A stretch of DNA of 64,000 nt from Basidiobolus meristosporus CBS 931.73 (GCA_002104905.1 MCFE01000126.1:1-64000); one strand, 5' to 3'; shown: positions 2,976 through 41,861, counted from the stretch's first letter. Numbers and translations are program-made. Notes: generated by a model from the sequence alone, not told the origin.

Positions 2976-3434
2976 AACCCTGATGCAAGACTAGCATCAT
3001 GAAAAATTAAAGCACTTTGTACTATTCAGCTAAGTTCTTATGATTCCTGCATGATACATGTGCACATGGAACACAAGTAGTAGTGGCAATGATGTCAAAT
3101 AATGTTTGTATTATAGCAAAAATGTATTGAACTTTTGAATACACTTTAAATCTAGTGAAAAGCAATTGGTTTACATAAAATTGGCATTGGTCATGAGTTT
3201 CTTATCATATTAGGGCCATGAAACTTATGGCACCCAGAGCTTATTAAAACATAGGATTGTGGCCAGATTGGGATGATTCCTATTAGTTATTAGATGTAGC
3301 ATTAAAAGTAACAATTTATTAATCAAATGATCATCAAGACTTATACAGAGCATACCAAAGTCTAGGGAGACCAATATTGGCCCAAAAATGTCCACTCTAT
3401 GACCAGACAATGTGCCAACTGTAGGGTAAAAATA

Positions 3435-3666
3435 CTTATGGTTAGGGTGATTAGGGTAAGGAAGATGAAATGCAACCCTAAGGGACCAGATTAAAAAATA
3501 AGAGAAAAGTAATTCAAAGGAATTTTAAAGAGTATGAGAGCAGTATGAGGGATTGCATTCCCCAAATGCCCTGCTTTTTATTCTCTAGGGGACTGCATCC
3601 CCCATGCCCTCTGCTCTTCTAACCTTTTCCTAGCCCTCACTATTGGACCTTCACCCTAACCCTAAG
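3435..3666. repeat. 232-bp element bounded by 16-bp imperfect inverted repeats made of TTAGGG units (MITE-like)
   Basis: CTTATGGTTAGGGTGA (3435-3450) versus TCACCCTAACCCTAAG (3651-3666), 15/16 complementary. Internal short direct repeats. No clear TSD. Confidence 0.45.
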
Positions 3667-6184: not shown

Positions 6185-6420
6185 TTATATGGTCTTATCA
6201 AAGCAAGCATGTAGAGTATATTTAGAAAGGACCCAAGAACATGTGTGCAAAGCTTCTGGCTGCTTGGATAATGCATCTAATCTCATGTTCTGGGTTCCTG
6301 ATATTGTGGTAAAAATACTCCAAGTAAATCCCAACAAGAAATTTGGTCAGAATTCTCTAAAGTTTGTAGGAGATGGTGTCTGTGACCAAGTTAGGTAAAT
6401 GCTTAGGTGTAACTACAAAA
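6185..6420 (+). repeat. Unclassified dispersed repeat, second copy inverted at ~42790-43025
   Basis: Translations 6189-6398(+) MVLSKQACRVYLERTQEH..GCLDN and 42838-43023(-) MVLARQTHRACLERSQEH..GCLDN align. Both copies lie in CpG-poor tracts. Confidence 0.7.
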
Positions 6421-9270: not shown

Positions 9271-9281
9271 CTTTATATAGC
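9271..9281 (+). promoter_or_regulatory. Putative TATA box of the NRPS
   Basis: CCTTTATATAG about 90 nt upstream of ATG 9367. Confidence 0.35.
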
Positions 9282-9366
9282 CAGTGTTATGACACTCCCT
9301 AGTACATCAAATCGATGAGCTGTTAATTCATCTAATAGTAGAATCTTGACCGTCAGAAATAGAAAT

Positions 9367-12300
9367 ATGCCTTCGATTGAACAACAACGTATCGAAACGA
9401 GCACTCTTCATGAAAACTGCACTGGTTGTGAACCAAGCTCCAGCGTTGAACAAAAAGTACAAGATATCCTAAAGAATACACCCGAGTTTGAGATACCTAT
9501 GGGGCTTTATCACACCTTACTGGAAGCATATCCACACAGCTTTGATGAGAAGGAGCAAAGCCCACAGCCGCTTTATTCTATCTGGGCCGCTTTAGATGGC
9601 TTTCTTAGGAAGCAGCTTCCAGCTTCGCATTTACCTCCAAGCCCTTGGATTTTCAGAAATAATGGCGAAGAGGCAAACCTAAAGCTGTTGATGACATTTG
9701 GAGGTCAAGGCATGATTGGGAAACTAGTGACGGAGCTAAAAGAACTGGTCGATCACTACCCAACTATTGTCAATCCAGTCATTCGTCAAATTGAGAGAGC
9801 CTTAGAAAGTTACAAGGATCTGGAGGATGTTAAATGTATATTTCCTAACGGCTTGAATCTAACTAATTACCTCAAGGAGGGCGGAAATCCCTTGGCCATC
9901 CCAGTCTCCATATCTATGGCTCTGGTTGCTCTGACTCAGCTCTTACATGTCGTCATTTTGTGTAGAATATTAGACCTAAGACCCAATCAGCTTTGCCAGA
10001 GATTCTCAGGAATAGGAGGTCACTCCCAGGGCATTGTGGCGGTTGTGGCATTGGTTGCATCTGATGATGAAGATGAATTTATGTCCAACATTGAACGGGC
10101 AGTTTGCTTTCTCTTCTGGGTTGGAGTATATTGCCAACAGAGTTGGGTTGACGACATGCCCAGCGCCGAGCAAATAGAAGATTGTATCCATAATAACGAG
10201 AACCATCCGTCCCCAATGATAGCTGTACGGAATCTAGATATTACCACGTTGTCTGGAACTATTGAGGAGATTAATGCTGATCTGGTTGATCCCAAGATCG
10301 TGATTGCTTTGCAAAACACAGCGATGGATTTTGTCTGTGCTGGACCGGTCAAGAGCCTATACTTGCTAGCCAGGAGATTCAGGGGCTTAAGTAACGCGCA
10401 TAGGAAGGTTTCAGCAAAGTTCTTGGAAGTGAAAGTTCCGTTCCATACGCCATACTTGAATGAAGCGATTCTGCCTGCCATGACAAAAATTCGTTCTCTC
10501 AAACTTGATTTCTCTCCTGACCGCTTATCACTTCCGATTTTGGCAACTGATGATGGCCGGGATCTCAGATCTAGCAAAAACTTAACCTTAAATTTAATCG
10601 AATTAATCTGTTGTCGGCCCCTAAACTGGCCCCAGACCCTTGGATCAGAAACCTACACGCACAATCTGGATTTCGGTCCTTGTAACACACCTGGTATCAC
10701 TCGATATACGAATGAAATTACCGGAGCCAAGGTCATTCTTGCTAACACGACTTGCACTGCATCAAAGAAATTTTGGACCCTGACTCATCTAATTGCTGAT
10801 CAAGCCCCTCAAGAAGTTACTGAAGAACAGGCCAACACCATGTTGGCTTCCACAACAGAACAAGCACTGATTGATGCCTTCAGTCATGTGCTTGCGATAG
10901 CAAAATCCAAAATTGGTGTTAATTCATCTTTTTTCAGTCTGGGTGGTGATTCCATTCTGGCCATCGAATTGGTCACCTGTGTGCAACAGCGCGGCATCCA
11001 AATTACGATCAAAGATATCTTTGACCATCCAGTAATTACCAAACTCGCTGAGGTTGCCAAGATTGCCGATGCTCCCGTTGTGAGTGATCTGATCCAACCG
11101 TTTTGCCTACTGGGACTGAGGTCTGTGTCCGAAAATATGGAATGGATAACGTCTTTTGGGATTGATCCTGCCAACATAGAAGATGCTTATCCAACTTCAT
11201 CCCTTCAAGCAGGGATGTTGTTTGGTGCGCTAAAGAGGAACGGTTGCTACCTCCTTCAAAACGTTTATAATATTGATGTTCTGTGGATATTGTGAAATTC
11301 AAGACTGCATGGGAGATTGTGTGGAAAGCTAACCCCATCTTCCGCACAACATTCATCACATCTAACGATGTGGATGCTTATCCAGCGCTACAGGTGGTTT
11401 TGAGGACTTCCCCTACGATGGCCCATTTTACAGATTGTTCGGATGAGATGCTCGATACTTTGGTCCAGCGGTACTTATATGATGACCTTCATACTGGTAT
11501 CGAGCTGGGTCAGCATATGGTACGCTTTGCTTTGTTTACAGCGAACTCTGGCACCCACCGTTTTGTTTGGACAATGCTGCATACACTATATGATGGGTGG
11601 TCGATGGACCTGATGCGCCAGGATTTGTACGATGCATACGCTGATGCTACCTTGCAACAGAGGACTCCCTTTTCCATGGCAGTGAAATTCTTGACATCGA
11701 AAGACGATTCCTCGGCGATTGAATACTGGAGATCCAAGCTAGCCGGCTCAACACCCTCTGTCATTACTCGCCTGGTCTCCACATCTAAAGAAATAAGCGC
11801 GGTAAAAAGTTACACCACCGAGGTGGCTTTGGAGATCACGAAATTACAAGAATTTACCAGAAACCATGAAATTACCTTATCCACGCTACTGCGCGCAGCC
11901 TGGGGAATAGTATTGAGCAGGCATACTCACTCGGATGATGTTATGTTTGGAATTACAGTTTCTGGAAGAGATGCTGCGATTCAAGGAGTTGAGGGTATCA
12001 TCGGCCCATGCATTAACACTATCCCACTACGTGTTAAAACTGATGGGAGCTCCAGCGTGCATACATATCTGAGAGAGATTCAACAAGAGCAAGTATCTGC
12101 GCTGCCATTTGAGCATTTGGGATTAGGGAAGATTCAAAATCACTGTACTGAATCGCCTCACTCATCATTGTTCCAGACAATGTTACTCTTTCAGAATTTC
12201 CCAACAAAATCCGAGAACTCGACAAACGTTCTAAAAGAGCTGATGCAACTTCAGAGTAGTGAAATGATGGCCGAGTACCCTCTCACAATAATTGTCGAGC

Positions 12301-15300
12301 AGGAGAAAGCATCACTGACTCTCAAGATGATTTACGATATCCAATTACTACCAGAGGCGCAGATCAAATGTTTGGCATCTCAGTTCCTCACCGCAATTGA
12401 AGAATTGATGAGTGAAAACAAGCTCATCAAAGATATCACACTAATCAGCCATTCAGAGCGTGAACTTTTACTTTGCAAATGGAACAATCAAACCTTCAAG
12501 CTTCCCGATCAAGAATATGTTCATACTCTTTTCGAACAACGGGCAGCCCAAGCGCCTGACTCGATTGCTGTCCAGTTCGAGAGTTCCGCATCCATTACCT
12601 ACGCCGAACTGAATCTGCAAGCTAACCGCTTAGCTCACCATCTGATTGGGCTAGGTGTGACTCCAGAGACCATAGTCCCCATCTGTGTGGACAAATCCAT
12701 CGACATGATAGTCATCATTCTGGCCATCATCAAGGCCGGTGCTGCCTACACCCCATTGGCCACCGACAGTCCTATCGAGCGTACTCGCTTCATTGTGCAT
12801 GAAACAGAGGCAAAGGTGGCTGTGACCGAGGGCAGGTTCAGCCCAGCATTCCAAGATGTCGCTGGGTTGACCGTGATCAATATCGATGAAATCAAGGAGG
12901 TGCTACGCTCGGACCAGCAACCCTCCACCAACCCACAGGTTGCCAACCTGACTCTTGACACGCAGTGCTATGTCATCTTCACCTCCGGATCCACTGGTCT
13001 TCCCAAGGGGGTGACCGTGGAACACCGGGCTATTCTGAGCTCAGTGCTAACATTCACCGATATCCTTGAGATCGACTCCGCCTCACGAGTGATCCTACTG
13101 TCTGCCTACACCTTCGATGTCTCAGTGTTCGAGATCTTCTCCTCGTTGACACAGGGAGGCACTCTCTGCATGGCGGCCAAGGACAACTTGCTCACCTATC
13201 TTCCGGAGATGATCCGAATGATGGATGTTAGCGTTCTTATTGGTACACCGACAATGCTCAGCATGGTTAATCCCGAGGAAGCGCCAAGCCTCCGCTCTCT
13301 CGGTATCGGGGGTGAGACTTTGTCCGAGGCCATGATCACTGCTTGGTGCGATCGTGTCAAGCTGGTCAACTGCTATGGACCAACGGAGGCAGCAGTGATT
13401 GCCTTGACTCATCATATCACCAGTCCTAGTGATCATGGAATCATCGGCTCACCTCAGGGCAATGTCCACGCTTACATACTTGATGATGGCCTTGGCCTCG
13501 CCCCTATCGGGGTGATTGGTGAGCTGTGCCTAAGTGGGTCTCAGCTCGCTCGTGGGTACATGAAGAGACCAGATCTAACGCGTAGTGCATTTGTCGAACA
13601 CCCCTTCTCTGCAGGAGCGAGGTTGTACAGAACCGGTGATTTGGCCAAGTATCGACCGGACGGCAAGATCGAGTTCATCGGGCGCAAGGACACTCAGATC
13701 AAGCTGAACGGATTGCGGATCGAACTCGGAGAGATTGAGAACACTGTGGCCCTCCACCCAGACGTCCACCACATTGGTGTTCTCCCGCTGACTACAAACG
13801 AAGGTCGAAGAACGCTAGTGGCATTTGTGTGCTTCACCTCCACCTCCAGCTCTACTGCCGATGCCGTTTCCGAGATCGGACTTGTTCATGCGGAACACTA
13901 TGACCAAGTCCGCGCGAACATTGCCGAGATTCAAGGAGAAGTGCACCCGCAGCTTGCCCAAGTATATGCTTCCCACGGTCTGGGTTCCACTCAATCGCAT
14001 GCCACTCAGCTCCAGCGGTAAGATTGAGCGCAAGTTGCTCGGCCCCATCTTCTCCAATCTCGACTTGGCCACATTGTATCAGTTTGGAAGTCTGACTGGC
14101 TCCTCGGATGTCACCCCACCCATAACGCCCCTGGAGATTGCTCTCCACGAGATTTGGTGTGAGGTTCTGCAACTCGATCGTCAATCAGTCGGCATTCATG
14201 ATTCTTTCTTCCGACTAGGCGGTGACTCCATCAGAGCCATTCTCCTCTCCTCACAATGCCGTCGCCAAGGTTTAGAGGTGACAGTGCAACAGATATTCGA
14301 CATGCCCACCATTGCCGAGCTGGGTGCGGTAGTCGTTGATGTCTCCACATGCAGCATTTCTGCGGGTTCTCAGGTGACCATTGAGCCGTACTCATTGCTC
14401 GGCCTCTCCGTGAGCGAGCTTCGGAAGCTGCTTGAAGATGAGCTTTCATCATTCGGACTGAAAGCTTCGGAAGTGGAGGATGTGTATCCATGTGCTCCGC
14501 TGCAGGAGGGCTTGCTGTCGGGAGTGCTTCGCAACGAGAGCAACTATCTACTCCAGTCTGTGTACGACATTGAGGGTGACCTGGAAGTGGATCGGTTCGA
14601 GCGTGCTTGGGCATCGGTGACTCAAGCAAATGCCATCCTTCGTACCACTTTTGTCACCAGCTCTGCTGTTGCAAGATCCCCCATTCTACAGGTCGTGAAG
14701 AAGGAGATATCATGCGCTATTGCCACCCACATGAGCAGCGAGGAGTCAATAGAAACCCAGCTCAGTGAATACCTCCGGGAAGATTTGAAGCGCGGAGTGA
14801 AGCTTGGGGAACAGATGATTCGGTTTGCGCTGTTCAGTATATCGGAGAAGAAACACAAGTTTGTGTTGACCCTTTCCCATGCACTTTACGATGGTTGGTC
14901 AATGCCTTTGATTCTTGAGGATTTCTATGGCGCATATATTGAGTTGGAAAGCTGTACAAGGCCCAGTTTCAATTCGTTTATCAAATTCTTGGTCCGCGCA
15001 GATGAAGCCCACTCTAAACAATACTGGACTGAATACTTGGATTCCTACTCAGTCTCTGAGCTGGTCCGTATTCCTGGTCCCAGCTATCAAGTGTGTTCTA
15101 ACCAAGTATATGCTTATGAGGTTCCATGCATTGCTAAAGAAATCATGAAGTTCTCGAAAATCTACGGTGTAACCCCATCAACATTAATACGTGCCGCTTG
15201 GTCTATTGTTCTAAGTAATCACTGTGCCACAAACGATGTGGTATTTGGCGTTACAGTATCAGGGCGTAATCTACCAGTAGTAGGAATAGAAAACATGGTC

Positions 15301-18300
15301 GGACCATGTATTAATACCATTCCCTTCCGTGCAAAGGTGGATAATGGCTCTACAGTAATGGAATGGTTACGTAAGCTCCAAGAAGAGCAAAAAGTAGCGC
15401 TTCCGTACGAATCCTACGGTCTTCGTCAAATCCAGAGTGGACTGCAGCTCCCTAACAACACCGCGCTGTTTCAAACATTGCTCGTATACCAAAACCTGCC
15501 CATGGTTGAGCTTAAAAATATGAGTCAACTGCCGTTCATAATGTCAAGCCAAATTACTGACTTGGGAATGGATTACCCAATAGTCATGACTGTAGAGTTG
15601 GGAGAGACAAGTCTTCATGCAAGATTGGTGTACGATCCTATTCTGCTATCCAAGAACGCAATGCAATGGATTTCGTCGCACTTTGGAGAAGTTCTTCAAG
15701 ATATATTAGCTCGACCACAATCCCAGGTGTCGAAGTTGAATCTAATGTCTATGCATGAGTCGGAGACACTACTTAATGCCTGGAATAATACGACTGTCGA
15801 GCAGCCAACCCAATCATCACTTATCCATTCCCTCTTTGAGGCCCAAGTCCAGAAAAGCCCCAGCTCAACTGCTGTGCAATTCCTGAATGTCAGGAGCCTT
15901 ACCTATACAGAGCTGAATGTCAAAGCAAACCAGCTTGCACATTTACTTATCAGTAATGGGGTGGAAGTCGAAGATATTATTCCTATATGTCTAGACAAGT
16001 CCGAAAACATGATCATCTCAATCTTCGGAGTTTTGAAATCTGGAGGCGCTTATGTTCCTATCGACCCAAAGAATCCTACCGAGAGAAACCAATTTATCAT
16101 TCAGGAAACTGAAGCCAAGCTGGTCATCACCTCGAAGAAATACTCCAGCAATTTCAAAGAAATAGGCGGACTGAAAGTAATAGTTATTGATGGGGAACAT
16201 GTCGAAGAGATCGCCCGGCAACCTACACCGAATCCAAATATTTTCGGCTTGATGAACAAAAACGTGGCATATATTTTGTTCACATCTGGCTCCACTGGTG
16301 CTCCAAAAGGGGTTATTCTGGAGCATGGATCGGTGGTCAACTCTATACACGAGCATCAAAAGGTGTGGAATGCTGACCAGCATACACGCGTCCTGCAATT
16401 TGCCAACTATACCTTTGATGTGTCCGTAATGGATTTCTTTGTTACTTTGTCGAACGGCGCAGTGCTCTGTATTGCACCTCAGGACGAGTTACTAACGGAC
16501 ATCAACTCGGTTATCCAGTTAATGAATGTCAATCATGCGGCACTAACTCCGACTGTTATATCCTTGCTTGACCCGGAAATGGTCACTTGTTTGAAGACCA
16601 TTGCCGCAAGCGGTGAGGCACTTACGTCTCAGATTGTCAGAACCTGGTCCTCGCGCCTTCGTCTGCTAAACTTCTATGGCCCCACAGAAGCGGCTGTGAA
16701 TAACACTTACCAAAGAATGGAAGTTGATACCTTCCCTAATCTCATTGGGAGACCTCTAGGAAACAACACTATCTATATATTGGATGAGGAATTACGCACA
16801 GTACCAATCGGAGCAGTAGGCGAGCTGTGCATTGGCGGATATCAGCTTGCACGAGGATATCTGAAGAATAAGCAGCTAACTGACTCAATATTCGTAGAAA
16901 ATCCTTTCGTTCCCGGACAAAGACTGTACAAAACCGGAGATTTGGCGAAATTTGACGCAGATGGGGCGGTAGAGTATATTGGACGTCGCGATCACCAAGT
17001 CAAACTAAATGGGCTTCGTATTGAGCTGGGAGAGATCGAGAGCATCCTATCTCAAGAGACTGTGGTGCAGAGTGCAACCGTGCTCCTGTTGGAGGTGGGT
17101 CTGGGAAAACGTTCATTGGTGGCGTTTTTGAATTTCAAAGAGATGGCCAGCACCTCCTCAAAGTTATCTCTGATCCAAAACGATGTGAACGGTAGGATTG
17201 CCTATTTGATTGCTGATGTTCAGAGCAGCCTGGAATCAAAAGTAGCGTACTATATGATGCCGAATATATGGGTTCCAATCAACACCATTCCACTCACTCA
17301 AAATGGAAAGGCAGATCGTAAGAAGCTGAATACCTTTTTCCAACAATTGTCTACGAAAGATATTCAAGCCTGTAGTAAAATTCCTGGTGACGCAAAGCCA
17401 GAGGATCCTACTTCTGCGATGGAGACATCCTTGAGAGGTATCTGGGGCAATGTACTCAACCTTGAGGAATCCGAAATTAGCATACATGATTCATTCTTCC
17501 GTTTGGGTGGTGATTCTATTTCTGCTATTCAAGTGGCCTCTAAATGTCGTCAGATTGGCATCTATTTCTCAGTTCAGCAGCTATTGAAGCATTCTACCAT
17601 TGCAAAACTTTCCTCGATCGCGGAAACCAAGTCAGGAATTAGTTTGCAATCCAATGAACCTGCTCTGGGAAGCATATTGTTAACGCCTGTTCAACGATGG
17701 TACCTTCAACAAGCAGACCAAAAATGCTACTTCCACCAGTCTTTCTTCCTGAAAGTCTCCAAGTATGTAGACTCTAATGCCGTCAAGATTGCCTTGACTA
17801 CCTTGGTCAAGCATCATGATATGCTGCGTTGCAGATTCACGAATGACAATGGCCACTGGTCGCAGGAAATCTCCTCTACCTCCGAGGAGATATCTCTTGA
17901 CGTGGTGGATATCACCAGAGAGAATCTCGAAGAGGCTGTGGCCACTGTGCACGATAGAATAGATGTCTTCACTGGTCCTATGTGTGCCTTCGGCCTGTTC
18001 ACTCTTGAGGGTGCTCAGTATCTCCTACTAGCCATCCACCATCTTGCGGTGGACTTTGTCTCGTGGCGAGTGCTGTTTGAGGACCTGGAAGACCTGTTAC
18101 TCGGAAAGCCCCTCCCCGGAAAGACCATGTCCTTCCAACAATGGTCAAGACTTCTCACTGAGCATGCGGCCAGTCTGGACACCAGTGACTGGCCCGTGGA
18201 CAACATCCATAACCGGTTCAGCTCGGATCTAGATCTGACTAGGAACACGGTTGACTCTAGCAAGACCATGACGTTCACCCTGGACAAGGAGGTGAGCCAA

Positions 18301-27300: not shown

Positions 27301-30300
27301 TGCTACGCTCGGACCAGCAACCCTCCACCAACCCACAGGTTGCCAACCTGACTCTTGACACGCAGTGCTATGTCATCTTCACCTCCGGATCCACTGGTCT
27401 TCCCAAGGGGGTGACCGTGGAACACCGGGCTATCCTGAGCTCAGTGCTAACATTCACCGATATCCTTGAGATCGACTCCGCCTCACGAGTGATCCTACTG
27501 TCTGCCTACACCTTCGATGTGTCAGTGTTCGAGATCTTCTCCTCGTTGACACAGGGAGGCACTCTCTGCATGGCGGCCAAGGACAACTTGCTCACCTATC
27601 TTCCGGAGATGATCCGAATGATGGATGTTAGCGTTCTTATTGGTACACCGACAATGCTCAGCATGGTTAATCCCGAGGAAGCGCCAAGCCTCCGCTCTCT
27701 CGGTATCGGGGGTGAGACTTTGTCCGAGGCCATGATCACTGCTTGGTGCGATCGTGTCAAGCTGGTCAACTGCTATGGACCAACGGAGGCAGCAGTGATT
27801 GCCTTGACTCATCATATCACCAGTCCTAGTGATCATGGAATCATCGGCTCACCTCAGGGCAATGTCCACGCTTACATACTTGATGATGGCCTTGGCCTCG
27901 TCCCTATCGGGGTGATTGGTGAGCTGTGCCTAAGTGGGTCTCAGCTCGCTCGTGGGTACATGAAGAGACCAGATCTAACGCGTAGTGCATTTGTCGAACA
28001 CCCCTTCTCTGCAGGAGCGAGGTTGTACAGAACCGGTGATTTGGCCAAGTATCGACCGGACGGCAAGATCGAGTTCATCGGGCGCAAGGACACTCAGATC
28101 AAGCTGAACGGATTGCGGATCGAACTCGGAGAGATTGAGAACACTGTGGCTCTCCACCCAGACGTCCACCACATTGGTGTTCTCCCGCTGACTACAAACG
28201 AAGGTCGAAGAACGCTGGTGGCATTTGTGTGCTTCACCTCCACCTCCAGCTCTACTGCCGATGCTGTTTCCGAGATCGGACTTGTTCATGCGGAACACTA
28301 TGACCAAGTCCGCGCGAACATTGCCGAGATTCAAGAGAAGTGCACCCGCAGCTTGCCCAAGTATATGCTTCCCACGGTCTGGGTTCCACTCAATCGCATG
28401 CCACTCAGCTCCAGCGGTAAGATTGAGCGCAAGTTGCTCGGCCCCATCTTCTCCAATCTCGACTTGGCCGCATTGTATCAGTTTGGAAGTCTGACTGGCT
28501 CCTCGGATGTCACCCCACCCACAACGCCCGTGCAGAATGCTCTCCACGAGATTTGGTGTGAGGTTCTGCAACTCGATCGTCAATCAGTCGGCATTCATGA
28601 TTCTTTCTTCCGACTAGGCGGTGACTCCATCAGAGCCATTCTCCTCTCCTCACAATGTCGTCGCCAAGGTTTAGAGGTGACAGTGCAACAGATATTCGAT
28701 ATGCCCACCATTGCCGAGCTGGGTGCGGTAGTCGTTGATGTCTCCACAAGTAGCATTTCTGCGGGTTCTCAGGTGACCATTGAGCCGTACTCATTGCTCG
28801 GCCTCTCCGTGAGCGAGCTTCGGAAGCTGCTTGAAGATGAGCTTTCATCATTCGGACTGAAAGCTTCGGAAGTGGAGGATGTGTATCCATGTGCTCCGCT
28901 GCAGGAGGGCTTGCTGTCAGGAGTGCTTCGCAACGAGAGCAACTATCTACTCCAGTCTGTGTACGACATTGAGGGTGACCTGGAAGTGGATCGGTTCGAG
29001 CGTGCTTGGACATCGGTGACTCAAGCAAATGCCATCCTTCGTACCACTTTTGTCACCAGCTCTGCTGTTGCAAGATCCCCCATTCTGCAGGTCGTGAAGA
29101 AGGAGATATCATGCGCTATTGCCACCCACATGAGCAGCGAGGAGTCAATAGAAACCCAGCTCAGTGAATACCTCCGGGAAGATTTGAAGCGCGGAGTGAA
29201 GCTTGGGGAACAGATGATTCGGTTTGCGCTGTTCAGTATATCGGAGAAGAAACACAAGTTTGTGTTGACCCTTTCCCATGCACTTTATGATGGCTGGTCA
29301 TTACCACTCATATTGAGTGATGTATATGTGGCATACATGGGTGGTTTACTCCCAACAAGGAAGCCCTATTCAGTATTTGTTGAGTATCTACTTAACCAGA
29401 ATGAACAGCTGGCTTCACAACATTGGCAGCGCTACTTGGATGAAATGGTTCCTACGGAACTTGTTCGTGTTAGCGACTCACAAAAGGTCCATACCTCTTC
29501 TTTCGTCAGAAACTCCGTACCCCTTGAACTTGCGTGCATCAAAAACTTTTGCAAGCAAGCACGGAGTTACTCTTTCTACACTTGTACGAGCAGCATGGAC
29601 CCTCGTCCTCAGCAAGCATGCAAATACTGAGGATGTACTATTTGGTGTTACTGTTTCCGGGCGAAACATTCCAGTTGATGGTATAGATGAGATGACTGGA
29701 CCTTGCATCAATACAATCCCCTTTAGAAGCACTGTTAATCAGGAACAATCGGTTTTAGACTGGTTATTGGAAATTCAACAGCAACAGAGTCGTACGCTTC
29801 CCTATGAATACTTCAGTCTTCGACAAATCCAACAAATCTGCCAAGTTGACAACCGCCGACCATTATTCCAAAGCTTGTTAGCGTTCCAAAACTTACCTAA
29901 TGTGGACCAACAGTCCAGCATTTCATTACCTTTCGCAGTTATTCCTTCCAAGGGTGAACTTGGTTTGGAATACCCGGTTGTTGTTTCGGTGGAACCCCAT
30001 GGAGCGACGCTGAACATTGAAATTGCCTACGATGCCAACGCAATTCCTACCACTGAGGCCAAATGGTTGCTATCACATATGTGTACAGCGGTCTACAATT
30101 TAGTTCTACAATCTGGCGAGAATGTTGGTATGGTATCGTTGATAGATGATGTTGAAAGACGTATCCTTCTTGACGATTGGAATCCCATTGAGAATGAGAA
30201 GGTCCAGGGTGACTATATTCACCAGCTTTTCGAACGTCAAGTGCTTGAATCCCCAAATGAGCCAGCTGTGGCATTCTACAACGGCACCACACTTACCTAC

Positions 30301-33300
30301 TCTCAGTTGAACACACATGCCAATCAACTCGCTAACCGATTGGTGTCATTAGGCATTGGCCCAGATGTTATCGTTCCGATACTATTCGAAAAATCAGTCT
30401 ATATGATTATTTCGATTCTAGCAGTCTTGAAGGCTGGTGGCGCTTATGTGCCACTAAATGCAGAAGGACCCGTCGATCGTAATGATTTTATTATCCGAGA
30501 TACAAATGCAATCCTTGCCATTGTGGATGAAGCACACGCACACACTATCAACTCGGGCGTTGCTAAAGTGATATATGGCGAGAGCCATCTAGTTGAATGT
30601 GAAAGCTATTCTTCCCAGAATCCGACAATAGCAAATGCAACCCATAGTAACCTATGCTATGTGATCTATACATCTGGATCAACAGGAACTCCAAAAGGTG
30701 TAATGATTGAGCATCTATCAGCTGTTCAATTTGCCACCAGTCGTCAGGGACAATGGCAGCTTGGAAAGAAGAATCGAGTCCTCCAGTTTGCGAACTACAT
30801 TTTCGACATGTCGGTGATGGATATCTTTGTTACTCTGCTAAACGGTGCTTGTCTATGTTTAGCCACTAAGGATAACATGGTTTCAAACCTTGCTCAAGTC
30901 ATAAACGATATGCACATCAATACGATAGAATTGACTCCAGCAGTGCTCAGCTTACTTAACCCGAAGGATGTTCCTACCGTAAAGCATGTTTCTATTGGTG
31001 GTGAGCTTGCTAGTAATGAATTAATTTCTCGGTGGAAGGATGCAGTTCAATTCCAGAATATGTACGGCCCTACAGAGTGTTCAGTTCTAGTTACGATGAA
31101 CGATATCAACAAGTATCCACAGGGAAATGTTATTGGAAAGCCACTCCCAAGTACCCAGATATATATCTTGGATAGTGACCTCCGCCTATGCCCTATAGGA
31201 GTAATTGGTGAACTCTGTGTTGGAGGGCCACAATTAGCTCGTGGTTACCTTAACCAACCAGAGACTACTCGGGCAAACTTTGTGGATCATCCATTCATCT
31301 CTGGGGAAAGAATCTACAAGACAGGTGATCTTGCCAAATGGAGACCGGACGGTAGTATTGAATACATAGGCAGAAGGGATTTCCAGATCAAGCTGAATGG
31401 ACTTCGTATCGAACTTGGAGAAATCGAAGCTACGTTATCTCAGATTACATCCGTTCAAAACATCGCCATTACTCTGGAACTACTAGAAAGTGGCAAAAAT
31501 GTGCTGAATGCCTATGTTCAGTTTAAGACGGCCAACATGGCCCATGACAACGAGCTGCGTATTCTCACGGTAGAAGACAACGAATTTATAGAGCAATTAA
31601 TTGCCGAGTCTTGCGACTTTGCTTCGAGTAAGCTCCCAAGCTATATGATTCCATCGACGTGGATCCCGGTGAGTGTGATGCCATTAACTCCCAGCGGTAA
31701 AATCGATCGGAAACAATTGAAGAGTTTATTCAAGTCAGCTGACGTTGGAAAAGGTTCCTCTTCTGACGAGGAGTCGAGTAAAAGAAATGTCCAGCAACCC
31801 GAAACTTTGGTTGAGGCCAAGCTAAGAGATATTTGGAGTGAGGTCTTGAACGTTAAGAAAACGGATATTGGGATACATCAGTCGTTCTTCCGTCTTGGTG
31901 GCGACTCCATATCAGCCATTCATGTTACCTCCAAATGTCGCCAAACTGGTCTACAAGTAACCGTGAATCAGATATTTGAGCAGCCTACGATCCACAAATT
32001 GGCAAAGGTTACTACTGAGCTTTCTTCGTCTACTTCGCGGATTGAAAAGGTTGTCGATGGACTAGTCAGACTCACTCCAGTACAACAGTGGTACCTTCAA
32101 CAAGCGGACCAAAAATGCTACTTCCACCAGTCTTTCTTCCTGAAAGTCTCCAAGTATGTTGACCCTAATGCCGTCAAGAATGCCTTGACTACCTTGGTCA
32201 AGCATCATGATATGCTGCGTTGCAGATTCACGAATGACAATGGCCACTGGTCGCAGGAAATCTCCTCTACCTCCGAGGAGATATCTCTTGACGTGGTGGA
32301 TGTCACCAGAGAGAATCTCGAAGAGGCTGTGGCCACTGTGCACGATAGAATAGATGTCTTCACTGGTCCTATGTGTGCCTTCGGCCTGTTCACTCTTGAG
32401 GGTGCTCAGTACCTCCTACTAGCCATCCACCATCTTGCGGTGGACTTTGTCTCGTGGCGAGTGCTGTTTGAGGACCTGGAAGACCTGTTACTCGGAAAGC
32501 CCCTCCCCGGAAAGACCATGTCCTTCCAACAATGGTCAAGACTTCTCACTGAGCATGCGGCCAGTCTGGACACCAGTGACTGGCCCGTGGACAACATCCA
32601 TAACCGGTTCAGCTCGGATCTAGATCTGACTAGGAACACGGTTGACTCTAGCAAGACCATGACGTTCACCCTGGACAAGGAGGTGAGCCAACTATTGCTT
32701 GGAAGTAGCAACGATGCGTTCCGCACCAAGCCAACTGAGCTGATTGTGGCTGCCTTGGCAGAGGCGTTTTGTGAAGTGTTCAGCCAGGACGGAATGACTC
32801 TGGCGATGGAGGCTCATGGAAGAGAGCCATGGGAGGATAGTATTGACATCTCCCGGACTGTTGGGTGGTTCACTTCGATCTATCCCCTGGCACTGGCCAT
32901 CTCCCCTGGTGACCACACCACCTCGATTCTCAAACGCGTGAAGGATACAATGAGAATGATTCCATCAAATGGGTTTGCCTATGGCCTACTCCGATTCCTC
33001 AACGAGCAGCACTCGCACAGGTACAAAGAGGACCTTCTCCCGATATCGTTCAACTATGCCGGTCGTTTCCAGCAACTGGAGAAGTCCGACTCCATGCTGC
33101 AATTCGTGACTGATATCCAGCTGAAAGATCACAGCTTTTCACCAGACTCCAGGCGTTTGTTTGTGTTTGACGTTGGAGCAATTGCCCTCTATGACACAAT
33201 GCAGTTCAGCATCACCTTCAGCGAGAATCTTCACTCAGAGGTGCTGATTCAGTCCTGGCTCAGTGCATGGAACACAAAGTTGGTAACGCTGGTAACCTTG

Positions 33301-36300
33301 TGTGCTCAGCAAGAGAACGCCCAGTTCACTCTCTCTGATCTTCCGCTCCTTAGCATGTCTACCGAGGAACTCGACACCCTGATGAGCATCACCCTTCCCG
33401 AGGCAAATATCGACATGAACAACGTCGAGGATGTGTATCCATGCCTTGCTATGCAGGATGGCCTGTTGGCAGGTACTATGAAAGACAAGGAGCAGTATGT
33501 CGTGCGAGTTGTGTTTGACATCACCGGAGCATTCGACTCTGAGCGATTCTTTGCTGCTTGGCATCAAACCATCGAGAACAATGCTGCCTTGCGAACAGTG
33601 TTTGTGCCCAACCCCAGCTCCATGAGTGTTGGCTGTCTGCAAGTACTGCTCAAGAAACTGACTGTTCCCGCTGAGCAGTATACCTGCAACAAGGAGGATG
33701 TGGACCTGATGATCGAAGAGTACCTGAAGCAGACTGTCAACAAGGGATTCAACATGGGTGAGCCGATGCTGGCACTCGCCATGTTCCAGATCACCGAGGA
33801 GCATCGTCGCTTCGTTTGGGTCATCCATCATGCCATCTTTGACGGTTGGTCCAACGGAATCATCATGAACGATGTACTCAGCACATACCTTGGCTTTGAA
33901 GTGGCAAGCAAGCCTTCATACAGGGAATTCGTGAAGCACATCATCTCTCAAAGCGCCGAAGACTCTAAGCATTTCTGGGAGCTTCAGCTTTCGGGCGTCG
34001 AGCCATCGGTATTCCCCAGGCTCAGCACAGAGGCTGTGTCCTTACCGAGAGCCATCGTGTCACATGAGAAGATTGGCTACACTGTACAGGAGATAAGCAA
34101 ATTTGCCCAAGAGAACAAGATCACGGTAGCCACACTTCTTCGTGCTGGATGGGGATTGCTGCTTCAGCAGTACCTGAACAGTGAGGATGTGGTGTTCGGA
34201 GTCACTGTTTCGGGAAGGAATGTAGCAATCGATGGGGTGGAGAGCATTGTTGGGCCATGTATTAGCACTATACCATTCAGAGTTCAGTATGAGGAAAAGA
34301 AAGTATCTGAATGGTTGGAGGACCTACATGCCCAGTACGGAGCCACTGTTCCACATGAGTATTACAGTCTTCGAGATATACAGCAAGCCAATGTGGGAGA
34401 ACAATTGTTCGACACTATCATGGTTTATCAAAATTATCCTCCACCTTCTGTACGACCAAGTGATATTCCATTCCAGTTCAACGTGCAGCGGTTTGTGGAA
34501 ACTACGGAATACCCATTGTCATTAGCCGTTGTACCTTCCTCAACTGAAATGACATTCAGAGTAGAGGGCAAGCGTTCGGATCTCACGATTGAGCAAATCA
34601 CTTTGATAGCCAAACGCTACAAGCAAATTATTGAGTCATTAATTGAGAATGTCGACAATTCCACTGCCAGGATTGACTTCTTAATTCCAGGTGAAAGACA
34701 CAAATTGATGGTGGATTGGAACGCCACCGAGCAAGAAGTGCCGAATTGTTTGCTACACCAACTGTTCGAAAATCAGGCAGAGATGCACCCAGATTCCATA
34801 GCTCTGGTGGCAGAAGATATGTCTAAAATGAGCTACGAAACGTTGAACATGAAGGCCAATCGATTGGCACACTACCTGATACGCTCAGGACTTCCCCGAA
34901 ATAGCATGGTTTTAGCATGCTTCGAAAAGTCAACGACAATGATCATTACAATTCTTGCCATCATGAAGGCAGGAGCGGTTTATGTTCCAATTGATCCCGA
35001 GGCTCCAGTTGATAGAATCAAGTTCATCTACGAAAATACAAATGCGACACATGCTGTGGTAGCTCCCTCCCTCCGTACTTTGTTTGGACAAGTAGAAAGA
35101 CAAGGCCTTCAAGTCCTCCAGTATGAGGAAATCATGGTTCAAGGTCAGCCAGTAGATAACCCTTATGTTCATCAACTAGCCCCTTCGGACCTTTGTTACG
35201 TTATCTTCACATCTGGCTCCACCGGTACCCCCAAGGGAGTCATGGTAGAACATCACTCGATAGTCAATTCTACCTGGACCACAGGAGCACTGTTCAAAAT
35301 CCAAAGGGAAAGTCGAATTCTCCAGGTCACCAATTATACTTTTGATGTCTCGATTATGGAGATCTTTGCCACACTTACCTACGGCGCTACTCTTTGTATA
35401 GCAAGTAAAGATAGCTTGCTCACCAATTTCGAAGAAGTCATCAACAGGCTGCAGGCTACACACGTATTGTCAACCCCAACATTGATCAAGATGGTCCGTC
35501 CGGATCAGACTCCGTCTCTTCAGCTGCTTGGGGTTGGCGGAGAAGCCTTTTCCGTTGCTGATATCGCCAATTGGACACCATATGTTGAGGTAATCAACTT
35601 TTACGGCCCAACTGAAGCGGCAGTAGACGTGTTTTCTCACCAACTAAACGGCCCATCCGACTTCAGTGTAATTGGTCGCCCCAAGGGGAATGTTCAAGCG
35701 TATATCTTGTCAACTGATATGCGAAACTGTCCGATATCGGTTATTGGTGAACTCTACCTGAGCGGGCCACAATTAGCTCGTGGGTATTTGAATCGACCCG
35801 ATCTGACGAAGGAAGCGTTTAATATGCATCCATTTGCTGAAGGGGAAAGAATCTACAAGACAGGCGATCTTGCTAGATATCGACCAGATGGCACCATTGA
35901 GTTCATTGGCCGTAAAGACTCCCAGATTAAGCTCAACGGATTCCGCATTGAGCTTGGTGAGATTGATAACGTGATGCTGCAGAGTCCCTCTGTATCGTAC
36001 GTCTCTACCCTTCCGGTTACTCTTGACCAGGGCAGTCGCTCATTAGTTAGTTTCATTTGTATTGAGCAACTTTCTGATTCCTTCTCCGAGATGGAACTCG
36101 TAACTATGGAGATGCTTCCATCGATATCGAGATTGATTCAAGAAATACTACTCACTCTATCCAAAAAGCTGCCACACTACATGATACCATCCAACATTGT
36201 ACCAGTTACTCGCATGCCACTAACCAGCAATGGTAAGGCTAACCATAAGGAGTTAATAGCGTTCTACCGCGATCACAAAGATAAGGGCCTGATTCAACTG

Positions 36301-38652
36301 CCCGGCAAAGCAGTCGACAAGGTAGTAACTCCTCCACAAAATTCGATACAAAAGACGATCCGCCATATCTGGAGTACTATTCTCAACCTGGAAGAAGAGA
36401 GCATCAGTATATATGATACATTCCTGCGAATTGGAGGCGACTCTATCTCTGCCATACAAGTTTCCTCCAAGTGCCGTCAGAACGGTATCTACCTCAGTGT
36501 TCAACAGATTCTATCTGTACCCACTATCGCACAACAGGCCACCTTGGTTGATCAGAACGGGGCGATTAATATGACTAATGACGACCCAGTTTCCGGTGAT
36601 ATACTTCTCACTCCAATCCAACACTGGTTCTTCGAACAAGAGCCCGACAATGTGGACCACTTTAATCAATCATTCTTGTTGCGTTTGCCATCACACATGG
36701 ATTATGAGGCTGTACATTCTATGGTCGAAAGTCTTGTTAACCACCATGATATGCTTCGCTGCCGCTTTGCCTATGAGGACAATACCTGGAAGCAGTATAT
36801 TCCCAAAGAAATCCAACCCATTACTATCGAGCACAAACATGTTACCGCTGGCGAATTGGATCAAGAACTTTGCAGAATGCAAACCATGCTAGATATCGAG
36901 AATGGGCCTATGTACGCAGCCGGACTAATCGAGATTTCCTCCGGTGAGAAGCTTGTTTTCATGACAATCCACCATTTGGTGGTGGACCTTGTGTCTTGGC
37001 GGATTATACTGGAAGACATTGAGTGCCTAGTACAGGGGCAAACCCTCCCACCCAAGACAACCTCCTTCCAGAAGTGGGCAAGCCTGTTGAGCGAACGTGC
37101 TTCTAAGATTGACCCAACTTCCTGGCCTGGGGCATCCTCCTCCGAATCGATCATCGATGATGCGACACTGGACCCATCACTAAACACCATCGACTCCTCT
37201 CAACGCCTGGACTTTGCATTGGATAAAGAACAGACAAGCGTACTACTCGGCCTCTGCAACAATGCATACGACACTGAAGCAGTAAACTTGATCTTGGCGG
37301 CACTCGTCAAATCGTACTTTGATATTTTCGATAGATCTGTATTTTCTGTGACTCTGGAGGGCCACGGACGAGAGGCCTGGGATAGCTCCATCGATCTCTC
37401 GAGGACTGTTGGGTGGTTTACCACTCTGTATCCGGTTTCTTTCGCACAAAGCAGCACAGATGACCTTCCTGGGTTGATAGCAGAGGTGAAAGCTCGGGTC
37501 AAAGAGATAACTCCCACGAAAGGGCTAAACTACGGTCTACTGCGCTACCTGAATTCAAAACGCCACCAAGAACTCAATGATCCCTACGAGATTGGGTTCA
37601 ATTATGTTGGCCGTTTCCAACAACTGGAACGCAAGGACTCCCTTGTGACCCTCGCTTCTGGATATTCGTTGAGTAGCTCCGATGTGGACCCACATATGAG
37701 ACGTCCTCATGTCTTTGATGTTTCTGGACTTGTCTACAAGGATGCTCTTCAATTGTCCATTCGTTTTAGCCGGGCCTTACACTCCGTAGAACTTGTGCAG
37801 CGATGGTTGGATTCCTGGAGCGGGCATTTGCTTGAGGTGATCGACCATTGCAGATTGGTAGCAGAATCCCGTATACCGGACTTGGTGGCTCCCAATGAGG
37901 CAGGCCCTGCCGACGTGGAGATCAGTGAATCGTTTTTGAAGGAGCTCACATCAAGTATCGAAGAACGTCACAACTCCTCCGACTGCCTTATTCCCCTTGC
38001 AATGAAACCATCCACAGCTCCTATATTCGTGGTTCATTGCGTCAGTGGTGTGGCATCGTACTATGCCTCCTTGAATCCGTATATTCAACGAACCACGTAT
38101 GGTATCTGCGACCCGCTTTTCACAAGCACCGAGAAGTTTCAAAGCATCGAAGAGATGGCAAGCTGCTACGTGAAGGCCATTTTGTCCATGCAACCGGAGG
38201 GGCCCTACACGGTTGCGGGCTACTCGATGGGTGGAGTGATCGCATGGGAAGTAGCCCAGCAATTGATGGCGAGTGGCAACTTTGTTGAACGGCTTGTGAT
38301 CATTGATTCGCCATTCCCTGGCGTCGCATACAAGGCTGATGAGCAAGAACACTCCGACAATATCAATCAACGCGTGGGAACCTCGATAGACTCAAGCTCG
38401 CTCGGACTGATTCAGGCCGAAACCTTCAACAACTCGAGGAACGCTAGTAAATATCAGCCCAGAGAGTATGACGGCCTTACGATCTTGATCAGGGCCCACT
38501 CTTCGGATCCACAGCTCAAAGAGGAATGGTTTGACGAATGGCCTAAGTACTGCCATCAAATCGAGACCCGCAGTGTTCATGGAAAGCATTCGGACCTCAT
38601 GGTGGAGCCGGTAGTGCAGCAAATCGCTGGAATTCTCAACGAGACACCTTAG
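9367..38652 (+). CDS. Heptamodular NRPS with FAS-type acyltransferase loading module: AT-T-(CAT)-(CATE)-(CAT)-(CAT)-(CAT)-(CATE)-(CATE)-TE, ~9761 aa after correcting six 1-nt indels
   Basis: Consecutive large + ORFs (9346-11295, 11283-14021, 13825-22104, 22101-22346, 22304-25522, 25506-29630, 29317-38652) join into one colinear protein. It has 7 A domains (FTSGSTGxPKG or YTSGSTGTPKG, YGPTE, YR/KTGDL, GRxDxQxKLNGxRIELxEI), 8 GGDSI carriers, 7 C, 3 E and a GYSMG thioesterase. Indels at ~11278(-1), ~13935(+1), ~22017(-1), ~22279(-1), ~25515(+1), ~29549(+1) sum to zero, and 9367-38652 = 29286 nt = 9762 codons. Confidence 0.9.
9640..10750 (+). other. Fas1-like acetyl/starter-unit acyltransferase (SAT) domain of the NRPS
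   Basis: Motifs TFGGQG (9697), GHSQG (Ser codon 10024), PSPMIAV, VCAGPxxSLY, PFH (10441), TDDGRDLR and HNLDFGP occur in the same order as in the yeast Fas1 AT domain (IFGGQG, GHSQG, PSPMLSI, VVSGPPQSLY, PFH, TFDGSDLR, HILDFGP). Confidence 0.85.
10850..11065 (+). other. Loading carrier domain T0
   Basis: SFFSLGGDSILAIEL, with the phosphopantetheine Ser codon at 10951. Confidence 0.9.
11170..14340 (+). other. NRPS module 1 (C-A-T); A code DVFIGGCVIK
   Basis: C motif MLHTLYDG, A core motifs, GGDSIRA. Code read by eye against GrsA positions. Confidence 0.85.
12560..14887 (+). repeat. NRPS internal repeat A (A1-T1-N half of C2), near-identical copy at ~26960-29286
   Basis: Line-by-line nucleotide match at offset ~14400 with only scattered substitutions and one indel. 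Confidence 0.95.
14460..18960 (+). other. NRPS module 2 (C-A-T-E); A code DVMAASFVNK
   Basis: C motif LSHALYDG. E motifs IHHLAVDFVSWR, MEAHGRE, SRTVGWFT. Confidence 0.85.
17698..19945 (+). repeat. NRPS internal repeat B (E2-most of C3), near-identical copy at ~32089-34336
   Basis: Match at offset ~14391. Confidence 0.95.
19020..22160 (+). other. NRPS module 3 (C-A-T); A code DMAEAGMVHK
   Basis: C motif IHHAIFDG follows an E domain. The T domain is restored by the 1-nt correction at ~22017. Confidence 0.85.
20812..23238 (+). repeat. NRPS internal repeat C (A3 from core motif A3-T3-most of C4), near-identical copy at ~24086-26515
   Basis: Match at offset ~3275. Confidence 0.95.
22300..25440 (+). 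other. NRPS module 4 (C-A-T); A code DMAEAGMVHK
   Basis: C motif ILHALYDG. The specificity region is near-identical to module 3. Confidence 0.85.
25580..28730 (+). other. NRPS module 5 (C-A-T); A code DVFIGGCVIK
   Basis: The A-T region is near-identical to module 1 at nucleotide level. Confidence 0.85.
28870..33350 (+). other. NRPS module 6 (C-A-T-E); A code DMMESGMVLK
   Basis: C motif LSHALYDG. The E domain is near-identical to the module 2 E domain. Confidence 0.85.
33420..37870 (+). other. NRPS module 7 (C-A-T-E); A code DVMLGGFVDK
   Basis: C motif IHHAIFDG. E motifs IHHLVVDLVSWR, LEGHGRE, SRTVGWFT. Confidence 0.85.
37980..38652 (+). other. Terminal type I thioesterase domain
   Basis: IFVVH..GPYTVAGYSMGG (Ser codon 38224)..LVIIDS..GKHSDL (His codon 38587). 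Confidence 0.85.
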
Positions 38653-41860: not shown

Positions 41861-41861
41861 A
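41315..41861 (+). pseudogene. CHAP protein copy 2, with a +1 frameshift (pseudogene or sequencing error)
   Basis: 547 nt versus 546 nt in copy 1. GCCAAGC at ~41468-41474 replaces GCCAGC. Otherwise near-identical, including the promoter. Confidence 0.75.

What the first reader, a model, noticed from the sequence alone, without database searches (positions are those of the whole stretch)
9367..38652. Predicted product: N-acyl heptapeptide with D-residues at 2, 6 and 7, released by a TE directly after an E domain
Seen: E domains follow modules 2, 6 and 7, and the chain ends T-E-TE. Identical codes imply residue 1 = 5 and residue 3 = 4, a pattern acyl-X-dY-Z-Z-X-dW-dV. Established: Dikarya NRPSs normally end in a terminal C or reductase domain, whereas TE release is typical of bacterial NRPSs. 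The C domains here carry fungal-style EDxYPxxxxQEG starts. Inference: because the N terminus is capped, the TE must hydrolyse or cyclise onto a side chain. No tailoring, transporter or PPTase gene is adjacent, so the gene looks self-sufficient.
Basis: partly seen in the sequence, partly recalled or inferred. Interest (0 to 1): 0.75.

Follow-up and report, generated by a model that had tools for sequence, protein, structure and literature searches.

The report
Seven-module fungal peptide synthetase gene
This is a real 29-kb gene of the fungus Basidiobolus meristosporus for a seven-step peptide assembly line that should make a capped seven-residue peptide with three mirror-image residues; the gene was catalogued in 2020, no product is known, and as assembled it is broken by six one-base frameshifts.

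Summary
The + strand at 9367-38652 encodes AT-T0-(C-A-T)2-E-(C-A-T)4-E-C-A-T-E-TE, with E domains after modules 2, 6 and 7 and a T-E-TE end. Pocket residues are identical for A1/A5 and for A3/A4. All catalytic motifs I checked in AT, C, A, T, E and TE are intact.

The finding left out several things.
- The reading frame is broken by six +/-1-nt frameshifts that are not introns. The public model (9712-38652, 8462 aa) hides them as introns. No in-frame stops occur in about 9,750 codons, and pN/pS between internal repeats is 0.23. Assembly error or very recent decay cannot be told apart here.
- The repeated residues come from three internal blocks of 98-99% nucleotide identity.
- The N-acyl cap rests on a fungal FAS beta-subunit acetyltransferase domain fused to T0-C1. 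I found this in no other NRPS.
- A, C and E domain trees put the gene on the fungal side, with B. ranarum paralogs and sister to Dikarya. They do not nest it in bacteria, although the 2020 catalogue lists both seven-A-domain models as bacterial transfers.

TE directly after E is known from ACV synthetase and NocB. The nearest proteins I retrieved are 40% identical or less, and none is named as a known synthetase. The product remains a collinearity prediction. Verdict: a new variant of a known kind, of moderate interest.

The parts
9367..38652 (+). Whole NRPS gene: first ATG of the ORF to the stop codon, about 9,760 codons, no introns needed, six +/-1 frameshifts
   Evidence: The public model runs 9712-38652 and gives 8462 aa.
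9646..10749 (+). Loading acyltransferase domain of the fungal FAS beta-subunit (Fas1) acetyltransferase type. It keeps FGGQG, the GHSQG serine and the PFH histidine.
   Evidence: 4v58_G E=1.3e-54, Fas1 residues 139-526; PF16073; FAS1 homology from about 9430; no KS in the window
10864..11058 (+). T0 carrier domain (GGDS serine present)
11179..12413 (+). C1, with motif LHTLYDG. A -1 frameshift lies at about 11278-11285.
12531..14331 (+). A1-T1. A +1 frameshift lies at 13935. Pocket residues are identical to those of A5.
14476..17625 (+). Module 2: C2-A2-T2
17662..19035 (+). E domain after module 2 (HHLAVD, EAHGRE, RTVGWFT, FNYAGRF)
   Evidence: (TIGR01720 99.9 bits against a cut-off of 74.2)
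19036..22163 (+). Module 3: C3 (HHAIFDG, post-E type)-A3-T3. A -1 frameshift lies at 22017 inside T3.
22278..22278 (+). -1 frameshift in the T3-C4 linker
22307..25438 (+). Module 4: C4-A4-T4. A4 pocket residues are identical to those of A3.
25516..25516 (+). +1 frameshift in the T4-C5 linker
25584..28730 (+). Module 5: C5-A5-T5
28875..32013 (+). Module 6: C6-A6-T6. A +1 frameshift lies at about 29541-29556 in an A5/T4 run inside C6.
32050..33426 (+). E domain after module 6, 98% identical to the first E domain
33427..36552 (+). Module 7: C7 (post-E type)-A7-T7
36595..38001 (+). Terminal E domain (HHLVVD, EGHGRE)
   Evidence: (TIGR01720 83.5 bits)
38002..38649 (+). TE domain with triad GYSMGG / IIDS / GKH. 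No T domain lies between the last E and the TE.
   Evidence: PF00975 2.2e-26; (best solved match NocB TE 6ojc, 3.6e-18)
12522..14939 (+). Internal repeat block 1, copy a (A1-T1 and the start of C2). It is 98.1% identical to 26922-29338 (A5-T5 and the start of C6).
17683..19946 (+). Internal repeat block 2, copy a (E and most of C3). It is 98.9% identical to 32074-34337.
20794..23238 (+). Internal repeat block 3, copy a (most of A3, T3 and most of C4). It is 98.5% identical to 24068-26515.

Best explanation
The locus is a single intron-free gene of Basidiobolus meristosporus CBS 931.73 (MCFE01000126.1) for a linear seven-module NRPS of fungal lineage.

Shown:
- The domain order is AT-T0-C1-A1-T1-C2-A2-T2-E-C3-A3-T3-C4-A4-T4-C5-A5-T5-C6-A6-T6-E-C7-A7-T7-E-TE.
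- All catalytic motifs that I checked are intact.
- Pockets are identical for A1/A5 and for A3/A4.
- There are six +/-1 frameshifts in the assembly.

Inferred mechanism:
1. The Fas1-type acyltransferase moves a short monocarboxylic acyl group, most simply acetyl, from CoA to T0.
2. C1 joins that acyl group to residue 1.
3. Seven alpha-amino acids are added collinearly.
4. Residues 2 and 6 are epimerised on the carrier and passed on by the post-E condensation domains C3 and C7.
5. Residue 7 is epimerised at the peptidyl stage, and the TE releases the D-terminated chain as in ACV synthetase and NocB.
6. Release is by hydrolysis to a linear N-acyl heptapeptide acid, or less likely by side-chain lactone or lactam formation.

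The pattern acyl-X-dY-Z-Z-X-dW-dV arose because blocks of modules 1-2 and 5-6, and of modules 3 and 4, were recently copied over one another. I take the frameshifts more probably for PacBio consensus errors than for true decay.
For: - Domain calls and order.
- E motifs and TIGR01720.
- C-domain motifs and the separate post-E class of C3 and C7.
- A-domain cores, D235 and K517 present in all seven domains, and the pocket identities.
- GGDS serine in all eight T domains.
- TE triad and the NocB TE match.
- AT domain: 1e-54 to fungal Fas1 AT, GHSQG and PFH conserved, Val where yeast Fas1 has I306 rather than an Arg.
- Fungal placement of the A, C and E domains.
- Repeat blocks.
- Coding constraint: pN/pS 0.23 between blocks, 0 in-frame stops in about 9,750 codons, all six breaks exactly 1 nt. 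Four of the six breaks are single-base differences from an in-frame near-identical paralogous block.
- The assembly is PacBio (PMC7466969).
Against: - Six frameshifts in 29 kb is a high density for a polished assembly, and no second assembly or reads could be consulted. A real pseudogene is therefore not excluded.
- No expression data for this gene were seen.
- The acyl group, the seven residues and the release mode are not determined. The pocket codes match no code that I can assign, and the GrsA numbering used to extract them is from memory.
- The AT could be a relic.
- The trees are single-domain FastTree or quick IQ-TREE trees on proteins chosen from top hits, and they are unrooted.
Confidence: 0.55

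Rival explanations
1. The gene is a recently dead pseudogene. The six frameshifts are real, each truncates a domain, and no heptapeptide is made by this strain.
For: There are six frame breaks within 29 kb. Three lie inside domains C1, A1 and C6, one lies inside T3, and two lie in T-C linkers. The public model needs about 1,185 codons of 'intron' to bridge them. The ratio of indels to substitutions between repeat blocks, about 4 to 53, is within the natural range.
Against: All six breaks are exactly 1 nt. There is no nonsense codon in about 9,750 codons, no larger indel, and pN/pS between blocks is 0.23. Every catalytic motif checked is intact. The assembly is PacBio (PMC7466969).
Confidence: 0.3
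2. The synthetase is a bacterial gene acquired by horizontal transfer. This is the 'surfactin-like' major-bacterial-clade reading of Tabima et al. 2020, and the TE end and the lack of introns would be bacterial inheritance.
For: PMC7466969 lists both seven-A-domain models of this strain (307892 and 343011) as HGT candidates. The gene has no introns and ends in a TE. The best solved matches of A2 are bacterial (LgrA, TycA, GrsA). The TE's hits among the fetched proteins are all bacterial.
Against: In trees with the best bacterial and fungal hits, the window's A, C and E domains lie on the fungal side of a bacteria|fungi split with 99-100 support. They group with B. ranarum paralogs as sister to Dikarya and are never nested in bacteria. 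The C motifs SHALYDG and EDxYPC, and the E motif HHLxVD[FL]VSW, fit the fungal type from my own knowledge. The best identity to any bacterial protein is 38% or less.
Confidence: 0.12
3. The AT-T0 head is an inactive relic or serves another role. The N terminus would then stay free and the TE could close a head-to-tail cyclic heptapeptide.
For: No other NRPS with this AT was found. The B. ranarum paralogs lack it. Truncated, inactive starter domains are documented in fungal NRPSs such as MalA (PMC9365243).
Against: The AT keeps FGGQG, the GHSQG serine and the PFH histidine. T0 keeps its serine. C1 keeps the catalytic His-xxx-Asp-Gly. The AT-T0-C1 stretch has no in-frame stops.
Confidence: 0.12

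Closest known systems
ACV synthetase (PcbAB) and nocardicin NocB termination modules
   Same: The chain ends C-A-T-E-TE, the last residue is epimerised, and a TE releases the D-terminated peptide. The NocB TE is the best solved match of this TE.
   Different: TE identity is low (69 bits). This gene has seven modules rather than three or five, and its N terminus is acylated. The ACVS comparison rests on my own knowledge of the family and was not tested here.
Malpinin synthetase MalA of Mortierella alpina (PMC9365243)
   Same: It is a seven-module, TE-terminated NRPS of an early-diverging fungus. It makes N-acetylated linear peptides rich in D-residues with a D-residue at the C terminus.
   Different: MalA is bacterial-like. 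It uses dual E/C domains and an inactive truncated starter C domain, and acetylation is done in trans. The gene here has separate E domains of fungal type and a cis AT-T0-C1 loading unit.
Fungal type I FAS beta-subunit acetyltransferase (Fas1 AT) and SAT domains of non-reducing PKSs
   Same: The N-terminal domain aligns to Fas1 residues 139-526 (E=1e-54) with a Ser-His dyad and hits Pfam SAT PF16073. Like a SAT domain, it sits at the N terminus of a megasynthase and faces a carrier domain.
   Different: It is fused to an NRPS, not to a FAS or PKS, and no KS is present. It has a serine nucleophile as in FAS AT, not the cysteine of SAT domains (the SAT cysteine is from my own knowledge).
Basidiobolus NRPS expansion catalogued by Tabima et al. 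2020 (PMC7466969)
   Same: This is the same strain and assembly. The gene is most probably one of the two models with seven A domains (307892 or 343011).
   Different: That paper places the A domains in a bacterial 'surfactin-like' clade and lists the models as HGT candidates. My trees place the A, C and E domains with fungi. 'Acyltransferase', 'epimerization' and 'pseudogene' do not occur in the paper's main text, and its one use of 'thioesterase' concerns another gene model.
Peptaibol synthetases with a PKS-type KS-AT-ACP loading module (own knowledge, not tested)
   Same: They are fungal NRPSs in which a cis acyltransferase and carrier supply the N-acetyl cap.
   Different: Those use PKS-type KS and AT domains and end in a reductase. 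Here the AT is Fas1-type, there is no KS, and the gene ends in TE.

Membership tests
Linear (type A) multimodular NRPS | Repeated C-A-T modules with intact core motifs: the second His of HHxxxDG in C, cores A3/A7/A8/A10 with D235 and K517 in A, and the GGxS serine in T | tested here: met
   There are seven A, seven C and eight T domains, and all checked motifs are present.
Linear (type A) multimodular NRPS | One uninterrupted reading frame | tested here: not met
   The assembly carries six +/-1 frameshifts. Whether they are real is not testable here.
NRPS epimerisation (E) domain | HHxxxD, the EGHGRE-type Glu, RTVGWFT and FNYxG motifs, and the TIGR01720 signature | tested here: met
   for all three E domains. 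In one search the two E domains scanned scored 99.9 and 83.5 bits against a cut-off of 74.2.
NRPS epimerisation (E) domain | The downstream C domain is of the class that accepts D-configured donors | tested here: met
   C3 and C7 are 28-34% identical to the other five C domains. They group with the fungal C domains that follow E domains, with support 87. In the smaller tree they grouped with the other window C domains.
Fungal-lineage NRPS (as against a bacterial transfer) | A, C and E domains branch with fungal sequences, not inside bacterial ones | tested here: met
   The bacteria|fungi split has 99-100 support in every tree, and the window domains group with B. ranarum as sister to Dikarya. 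Sampling is limited to top hits and the trees are unrooted.
'Surfactin-like' bacterial A-domain clade of Tabima et al. 2020 | A domains nested among bacterial A domains | tested here: not met
   The reference sequences of that paper (Photorhabdus, PvdD, DhbF) were not in my trees.
Fas1-type acetyltransferase domain | Homology to Fas1 AT with the GHSQG serine and the PFH histidine | tested here: met
   (E=1.3e-54 and alignment).
Fas1-type acetyltransferase domain | Transfers acetyl or a short acyl group from CoA to the adjacent carrier | not testable with these tools
   The only indirect hint is Val at the position of yeast I306, with no Arg there (the role of that residue is from my own knowledge).
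ACVS/NocB-type T-E-TE release | TE directly after the terminal E, with an intact Ser-Asp-His triad | tested here: met
ACVS/NocB-type T-E-TE release | TE selects or forms the D-epimer and hydrolyses | not testable with these tools
   This needs an enzyme assay or the product structure.
Bacterial lipopeptide starter C (Cs) domain | C1 belongs to the Cs subtype | not tested
   No Cs references were in my trees. C1 groups with the window's other non-post-E C domains on the fungal side.

The most novel reading that the evidence does not exclude
A fungal-lineage NRPS has recruited the acetyltransferase domain of the fungal fatty-acid synthase beta subunit as a built-in loading domain (AT-T0-C1, no KS). 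I found this way of N-capping a nonribosomal peptide in no other protein or paper. With it, the enzyme would make an N-acyl, D-terminated linear heptapeptide that resembles Mortierella's malpinin surfactants, but by an independent, non-bacterial route.
Probability: 0.35. Interest if true: 0.65.

Novelty: new variant of a known kind. Interest (0 to 1): 0.45.

Why it matters
Early-diverging fungi were long thought poor in secondary metabolism, and Basidiobolus is the exception. Its large NRPSs have been explained mainly by gene transfer from gut bacteria. This gene would be a counter-example: a large TE-terminated, E-domain-containing synthetase whose A, C and E domains are of fungal descent. 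It has a loading domain borrowed from the fungus's own fatty-acid synthase, and it is being remodelled by block-wise copying between modules.

The predicted residue pattern (1 = 5, 3 = 4; D at positions 2, 6 and 7; N-acyl) gives natural-product chemists a concrete mass-spectrometric signature to look for.

For annotators it is a warning. The public model starts inside the AT domain and hides six frameshifts as introns.

Tried and rejected
1. Introns as the cause of the frame changes are rejected. The homologous alignment continues across each break with 0-3 residues missing, and four breaks are single-base differences from an in-frame paralogous block.

2. The search for orthologues or the same architecture led nowhere.
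- A word search with AT-T0 found only two FAS fragments.
- The whole-library representative search returned NRPSs matching only T-C, plus FAS proteins.
- Searches with E7-TE and with module 2 found nothing above 40% identity.
- The gene's own public model did not appear in any of these, so these blanks are weak evidence.

3. B. ranarum paralog loci have no AT within the roughly 6 kb of sequence upstream.

4. There is no KS or further FAS part upstream.

5. Naming the seven residues from pocket codes was abandoned. No predictor is available, the codes (DVFIGGCVIK, DVMAASFVNK, DMAEAGMVHK, DMMESGMVLK, DVMLGGFVDK) match no code I can recall, and the numbering rests on a remembered GrsA sequence. 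Glu at position 278 in A3, A4 and A6 might hint at basic residues, but that is speculation.

6. Literature searches for a Basidiobolus heptapeptide or for a FAS-type AT on an NRPS found nothing relevant.

7. I tried to judge the assembly's indel rate from flanking genes, but there is too little conserved coding sequence there.

8. Earlier-findings look-ups by sequence and by 'frameshift' gave nothing usable.

Full report
**What is there.** The + strand between 9346 and 38652 is covered by six long overlapping or abutting ORFs. Pfam finds SAT/AT, PP-binding, Condensation, AMP-binding and Thioesterase domains in them, with E-values from 1e-14 to 1e-195. A tblastn of one example of each domain against the region gives the full order: AT-T0-C1-A1-T1-C2-A2-T2-E-C3-A3-T3-C4-A4-T4-C5-A5-T5-C6-A6-T6-E-C7-A7-T7-E-TE. 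So there are seven A domains, E domains after modules 2, 6 and 7, and a TE directly after the last E with no carrier between them.

**The frame is broken.** The pieces are not joined by introns. At each junction the homologous alignment runs on in another frame with 0-3 residues missing.
- There are six single-base frameshifts: about 11280 (-1, in C1), 13935 (+1, in A1), 22017 (-1, in T3), 22278 (-1, T3-C4 linker), 25516 (+1, T4-C5 linker) and about 29550 (+1, in C6, within an A5/T4 run).
- Four of them are visible as one-base differences from a near-identical paralogous block that stays in frame.
- Read in the shifted frames, the roughly 9,750 codons contain no stop codon. The substitutions that separate the internal repeat copies give pN/pS = 0.23 (30 synonymous, 23 non-synonymous).
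- All six breaks are exactly one base, and no larger indel is present.

This pattern fits consensus errors of a PacBio assembly, or decay so recent that nothing else has happened. I could not tell these apart, because no reads or second assembly were within reach.

**Where the window comes from.** The window is bases 1-64000 of MCFE01000126.1 in GCA_002104905.1, the PacBio assembly of B. meristosporus CBS 931.73 (PMC7466969). The public gene model spans 9712-38652 but yields only 8462 residues, so about 1,185 codons are hidden as introns. Its start codon lies just after the FGGQG motif of the AT domain. Homology to Fas1 begins near 9430, and the first ATG of the ORF is at 9367.

**Are the domains competent?**
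- The three E domains carry HHxxxD, the Glu of the EGHGRE motif (EAHGRE, EAHGRE, EGHGRE), RTVGWFT, and FNYAGRF or FNYVGRF. The two that were scanned exceed the TIGR01720 cut-off.
- All seven C domains keep the catalytic His-xxx-Asp-Gly.
- All A domains keep cores A3, A7, A8 and A10, together with D235 and K517.
- All eight T domains keep GGDS.
- The TE has GYSMGG, IIDS and GKH.

The refutation condition 'inactive E domains' therefore finds no support in the sequence.

**Same residue at 1 and 5, and at 3 and 4.** Pocket residues taken from a seven-way alignment by motif anchors are DVFIGGCVIK for A1 and A5, DMAEAGMVHK for A3 and A4, DVMAASFVNK for A2, DMMESGMVLK for A6 and DVMLGGFVDK for A7. 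The GrsA numbering behind these codes is from memory. The reason for the identities is structural. Three pairs of blocks are 98-99% identical at the DNA level:
- 12522-14939 with 26922-29338 (A1-T1-C2 start = A5-T5-C6 start);
- 17683-19946 with 32074-34337 (E-C3 = E-C7);
- 20794-23238 with 24068-26515 (A3-T3-C4 = A4-T4-C5).

Between these blocks the modules are only 40-60% identical. The gene is thus a mosaic made by recent block duplication or gene conversion. I could not assign the residues.

**The cap.** Residues 101-468 of the first ORF align to residues 139-526 of fungal FAS beta subunits, which is the acetyltransferase domain (E = 1.3e-54). The GHSQG nucleophile and the PFH histidine are conserved. 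Val stands at the position of yeast I306, where malonyl transferases carry an Arg (the role of that residue is from my own knowledge). This argues for a non-carboxylated acyl group, most simply acetyl. T0 and a C1 with an intact active site follow. No KS or other FAS part lies in the window. I found this AT on no other NRPS:
- not in the word search;
- not among the top 150 of the 1.84-billion-protein representative search;
- not in any fetched protein;
- not upstream of the two B. ranarum paralogs.

The gene's own public model was also missing from those results, so these blanks are weak evidence.

**Descent.** Tabima et al. list both seven-A-domain models of this strain as bacterial HGT candidates in a 'surfactin-like' clade. 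I built domain trees from the best bacterial and fungal hits of two searches.
- E domains: 41 bacterial against 37 fungal, split support 100, with the window on the fungal side outside Dikarya.
- C domains: the bacteria|fungi split has support 99. C1, C2, C4, C5 and C6 group with B. ranarum C domains. C3 and C7 fall in the fungal post-E group.
- A domains: the split has support 99-100 in FastTree and in IQ-TREE. The window and B. ranarum form a clade (88-91) sister to Dikarya.

The TE is the least fungal-looking part. Its hits among the fetched proteins are bacterial, and its best solved match is the NocB TE.

**Release.** T-E-TE is the arrangement of ACV synthetase (own knowledge) and of NocB. 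TE release straight after an E domain is therefore a known design, not a new one. With an acylated N terminus, head-to-tail cyclisation is excluded. Hydrolysis to a linear acid is the simplest outcome, and side-chain cyclisation remains possible. By function, the closest characterised products are the malpinins of Mortierella: N-acetyl, D-rich, D-terminated linear peptides. They are made by a bacterial-like synthetase with dual E/C domains and trans acetylation.

**Surroundings.** Upstream, 2.2-9.3 kb is AT-rich and has no convincing gene. Downstream lie two CHAP-domain genes, a KH-domain gene, an AN1 zinc-finger array and an RGS/7TM gene. 'Self-sufficient' still overstates the case, because a PPTase is needed in trans.

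**Verdict.** The gene is catalogued and its class is known, and no product has been linked to it. What is new is the Fas1-type AT loading unit, the fungal descent of a TE-terminated E-containing synthetase, and the hidden frameshifts. I rate it a new variant of a known kind, interest 0.45.

Noticed in passing
window 39972-40517 and 41315-41861 (+): Two CHAP-domain (amidase/peptidase) genes lie 1.3 and 2.7 kb downstream of the NRPS stop codon. From my own knowledge this domain is mostly bacterial or phage, so they may be another transfer. They could also have a peptide-related role.
   Followed up: partly
window 9712-38652: The public gene model (8462 aa) starts inside the AT domain, after the FGGQG motif. 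It bridges six frameshifts with about 1,185 codons of presumed introns, so the deposited protein lacks parts of several domains.
   Followed up: yes
window 1773-2575: A 402-nt unit is repeated twice in tandem (93% match, no indels). It overlaps an ORF of 231 aa (1416-2111) that has no Pfam hit.
   Followed up: no
window 2200-9300: About 7 kb of AT-rich sequence (37-40% GC) lies directly upstream of the NRPS and contains no ORF over 95 aa.
   Followed up: no
P0064 (Calcarisporiella thermophila NRPS, 2756 aa): In my trees its A domain sits among bacterial A domains, while its E and C domains sit with fungal ones. It may be a bacterial-fungal chimera.
   Followed up: no
L003 and L004 (B. ranarum GCA_040143965.1): These are the closest retrievable relatives, three-module paralogs at 38-40% identity. 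One is C-A-T-E-C-A-T-C-A-T and carries reductase-type Pfam families (PF07993, PF01370). The other reads A-T-E-C-A-T-C-A-T-E and runs to the end of its contig. Neither has an AT head.
   Followed up: partly
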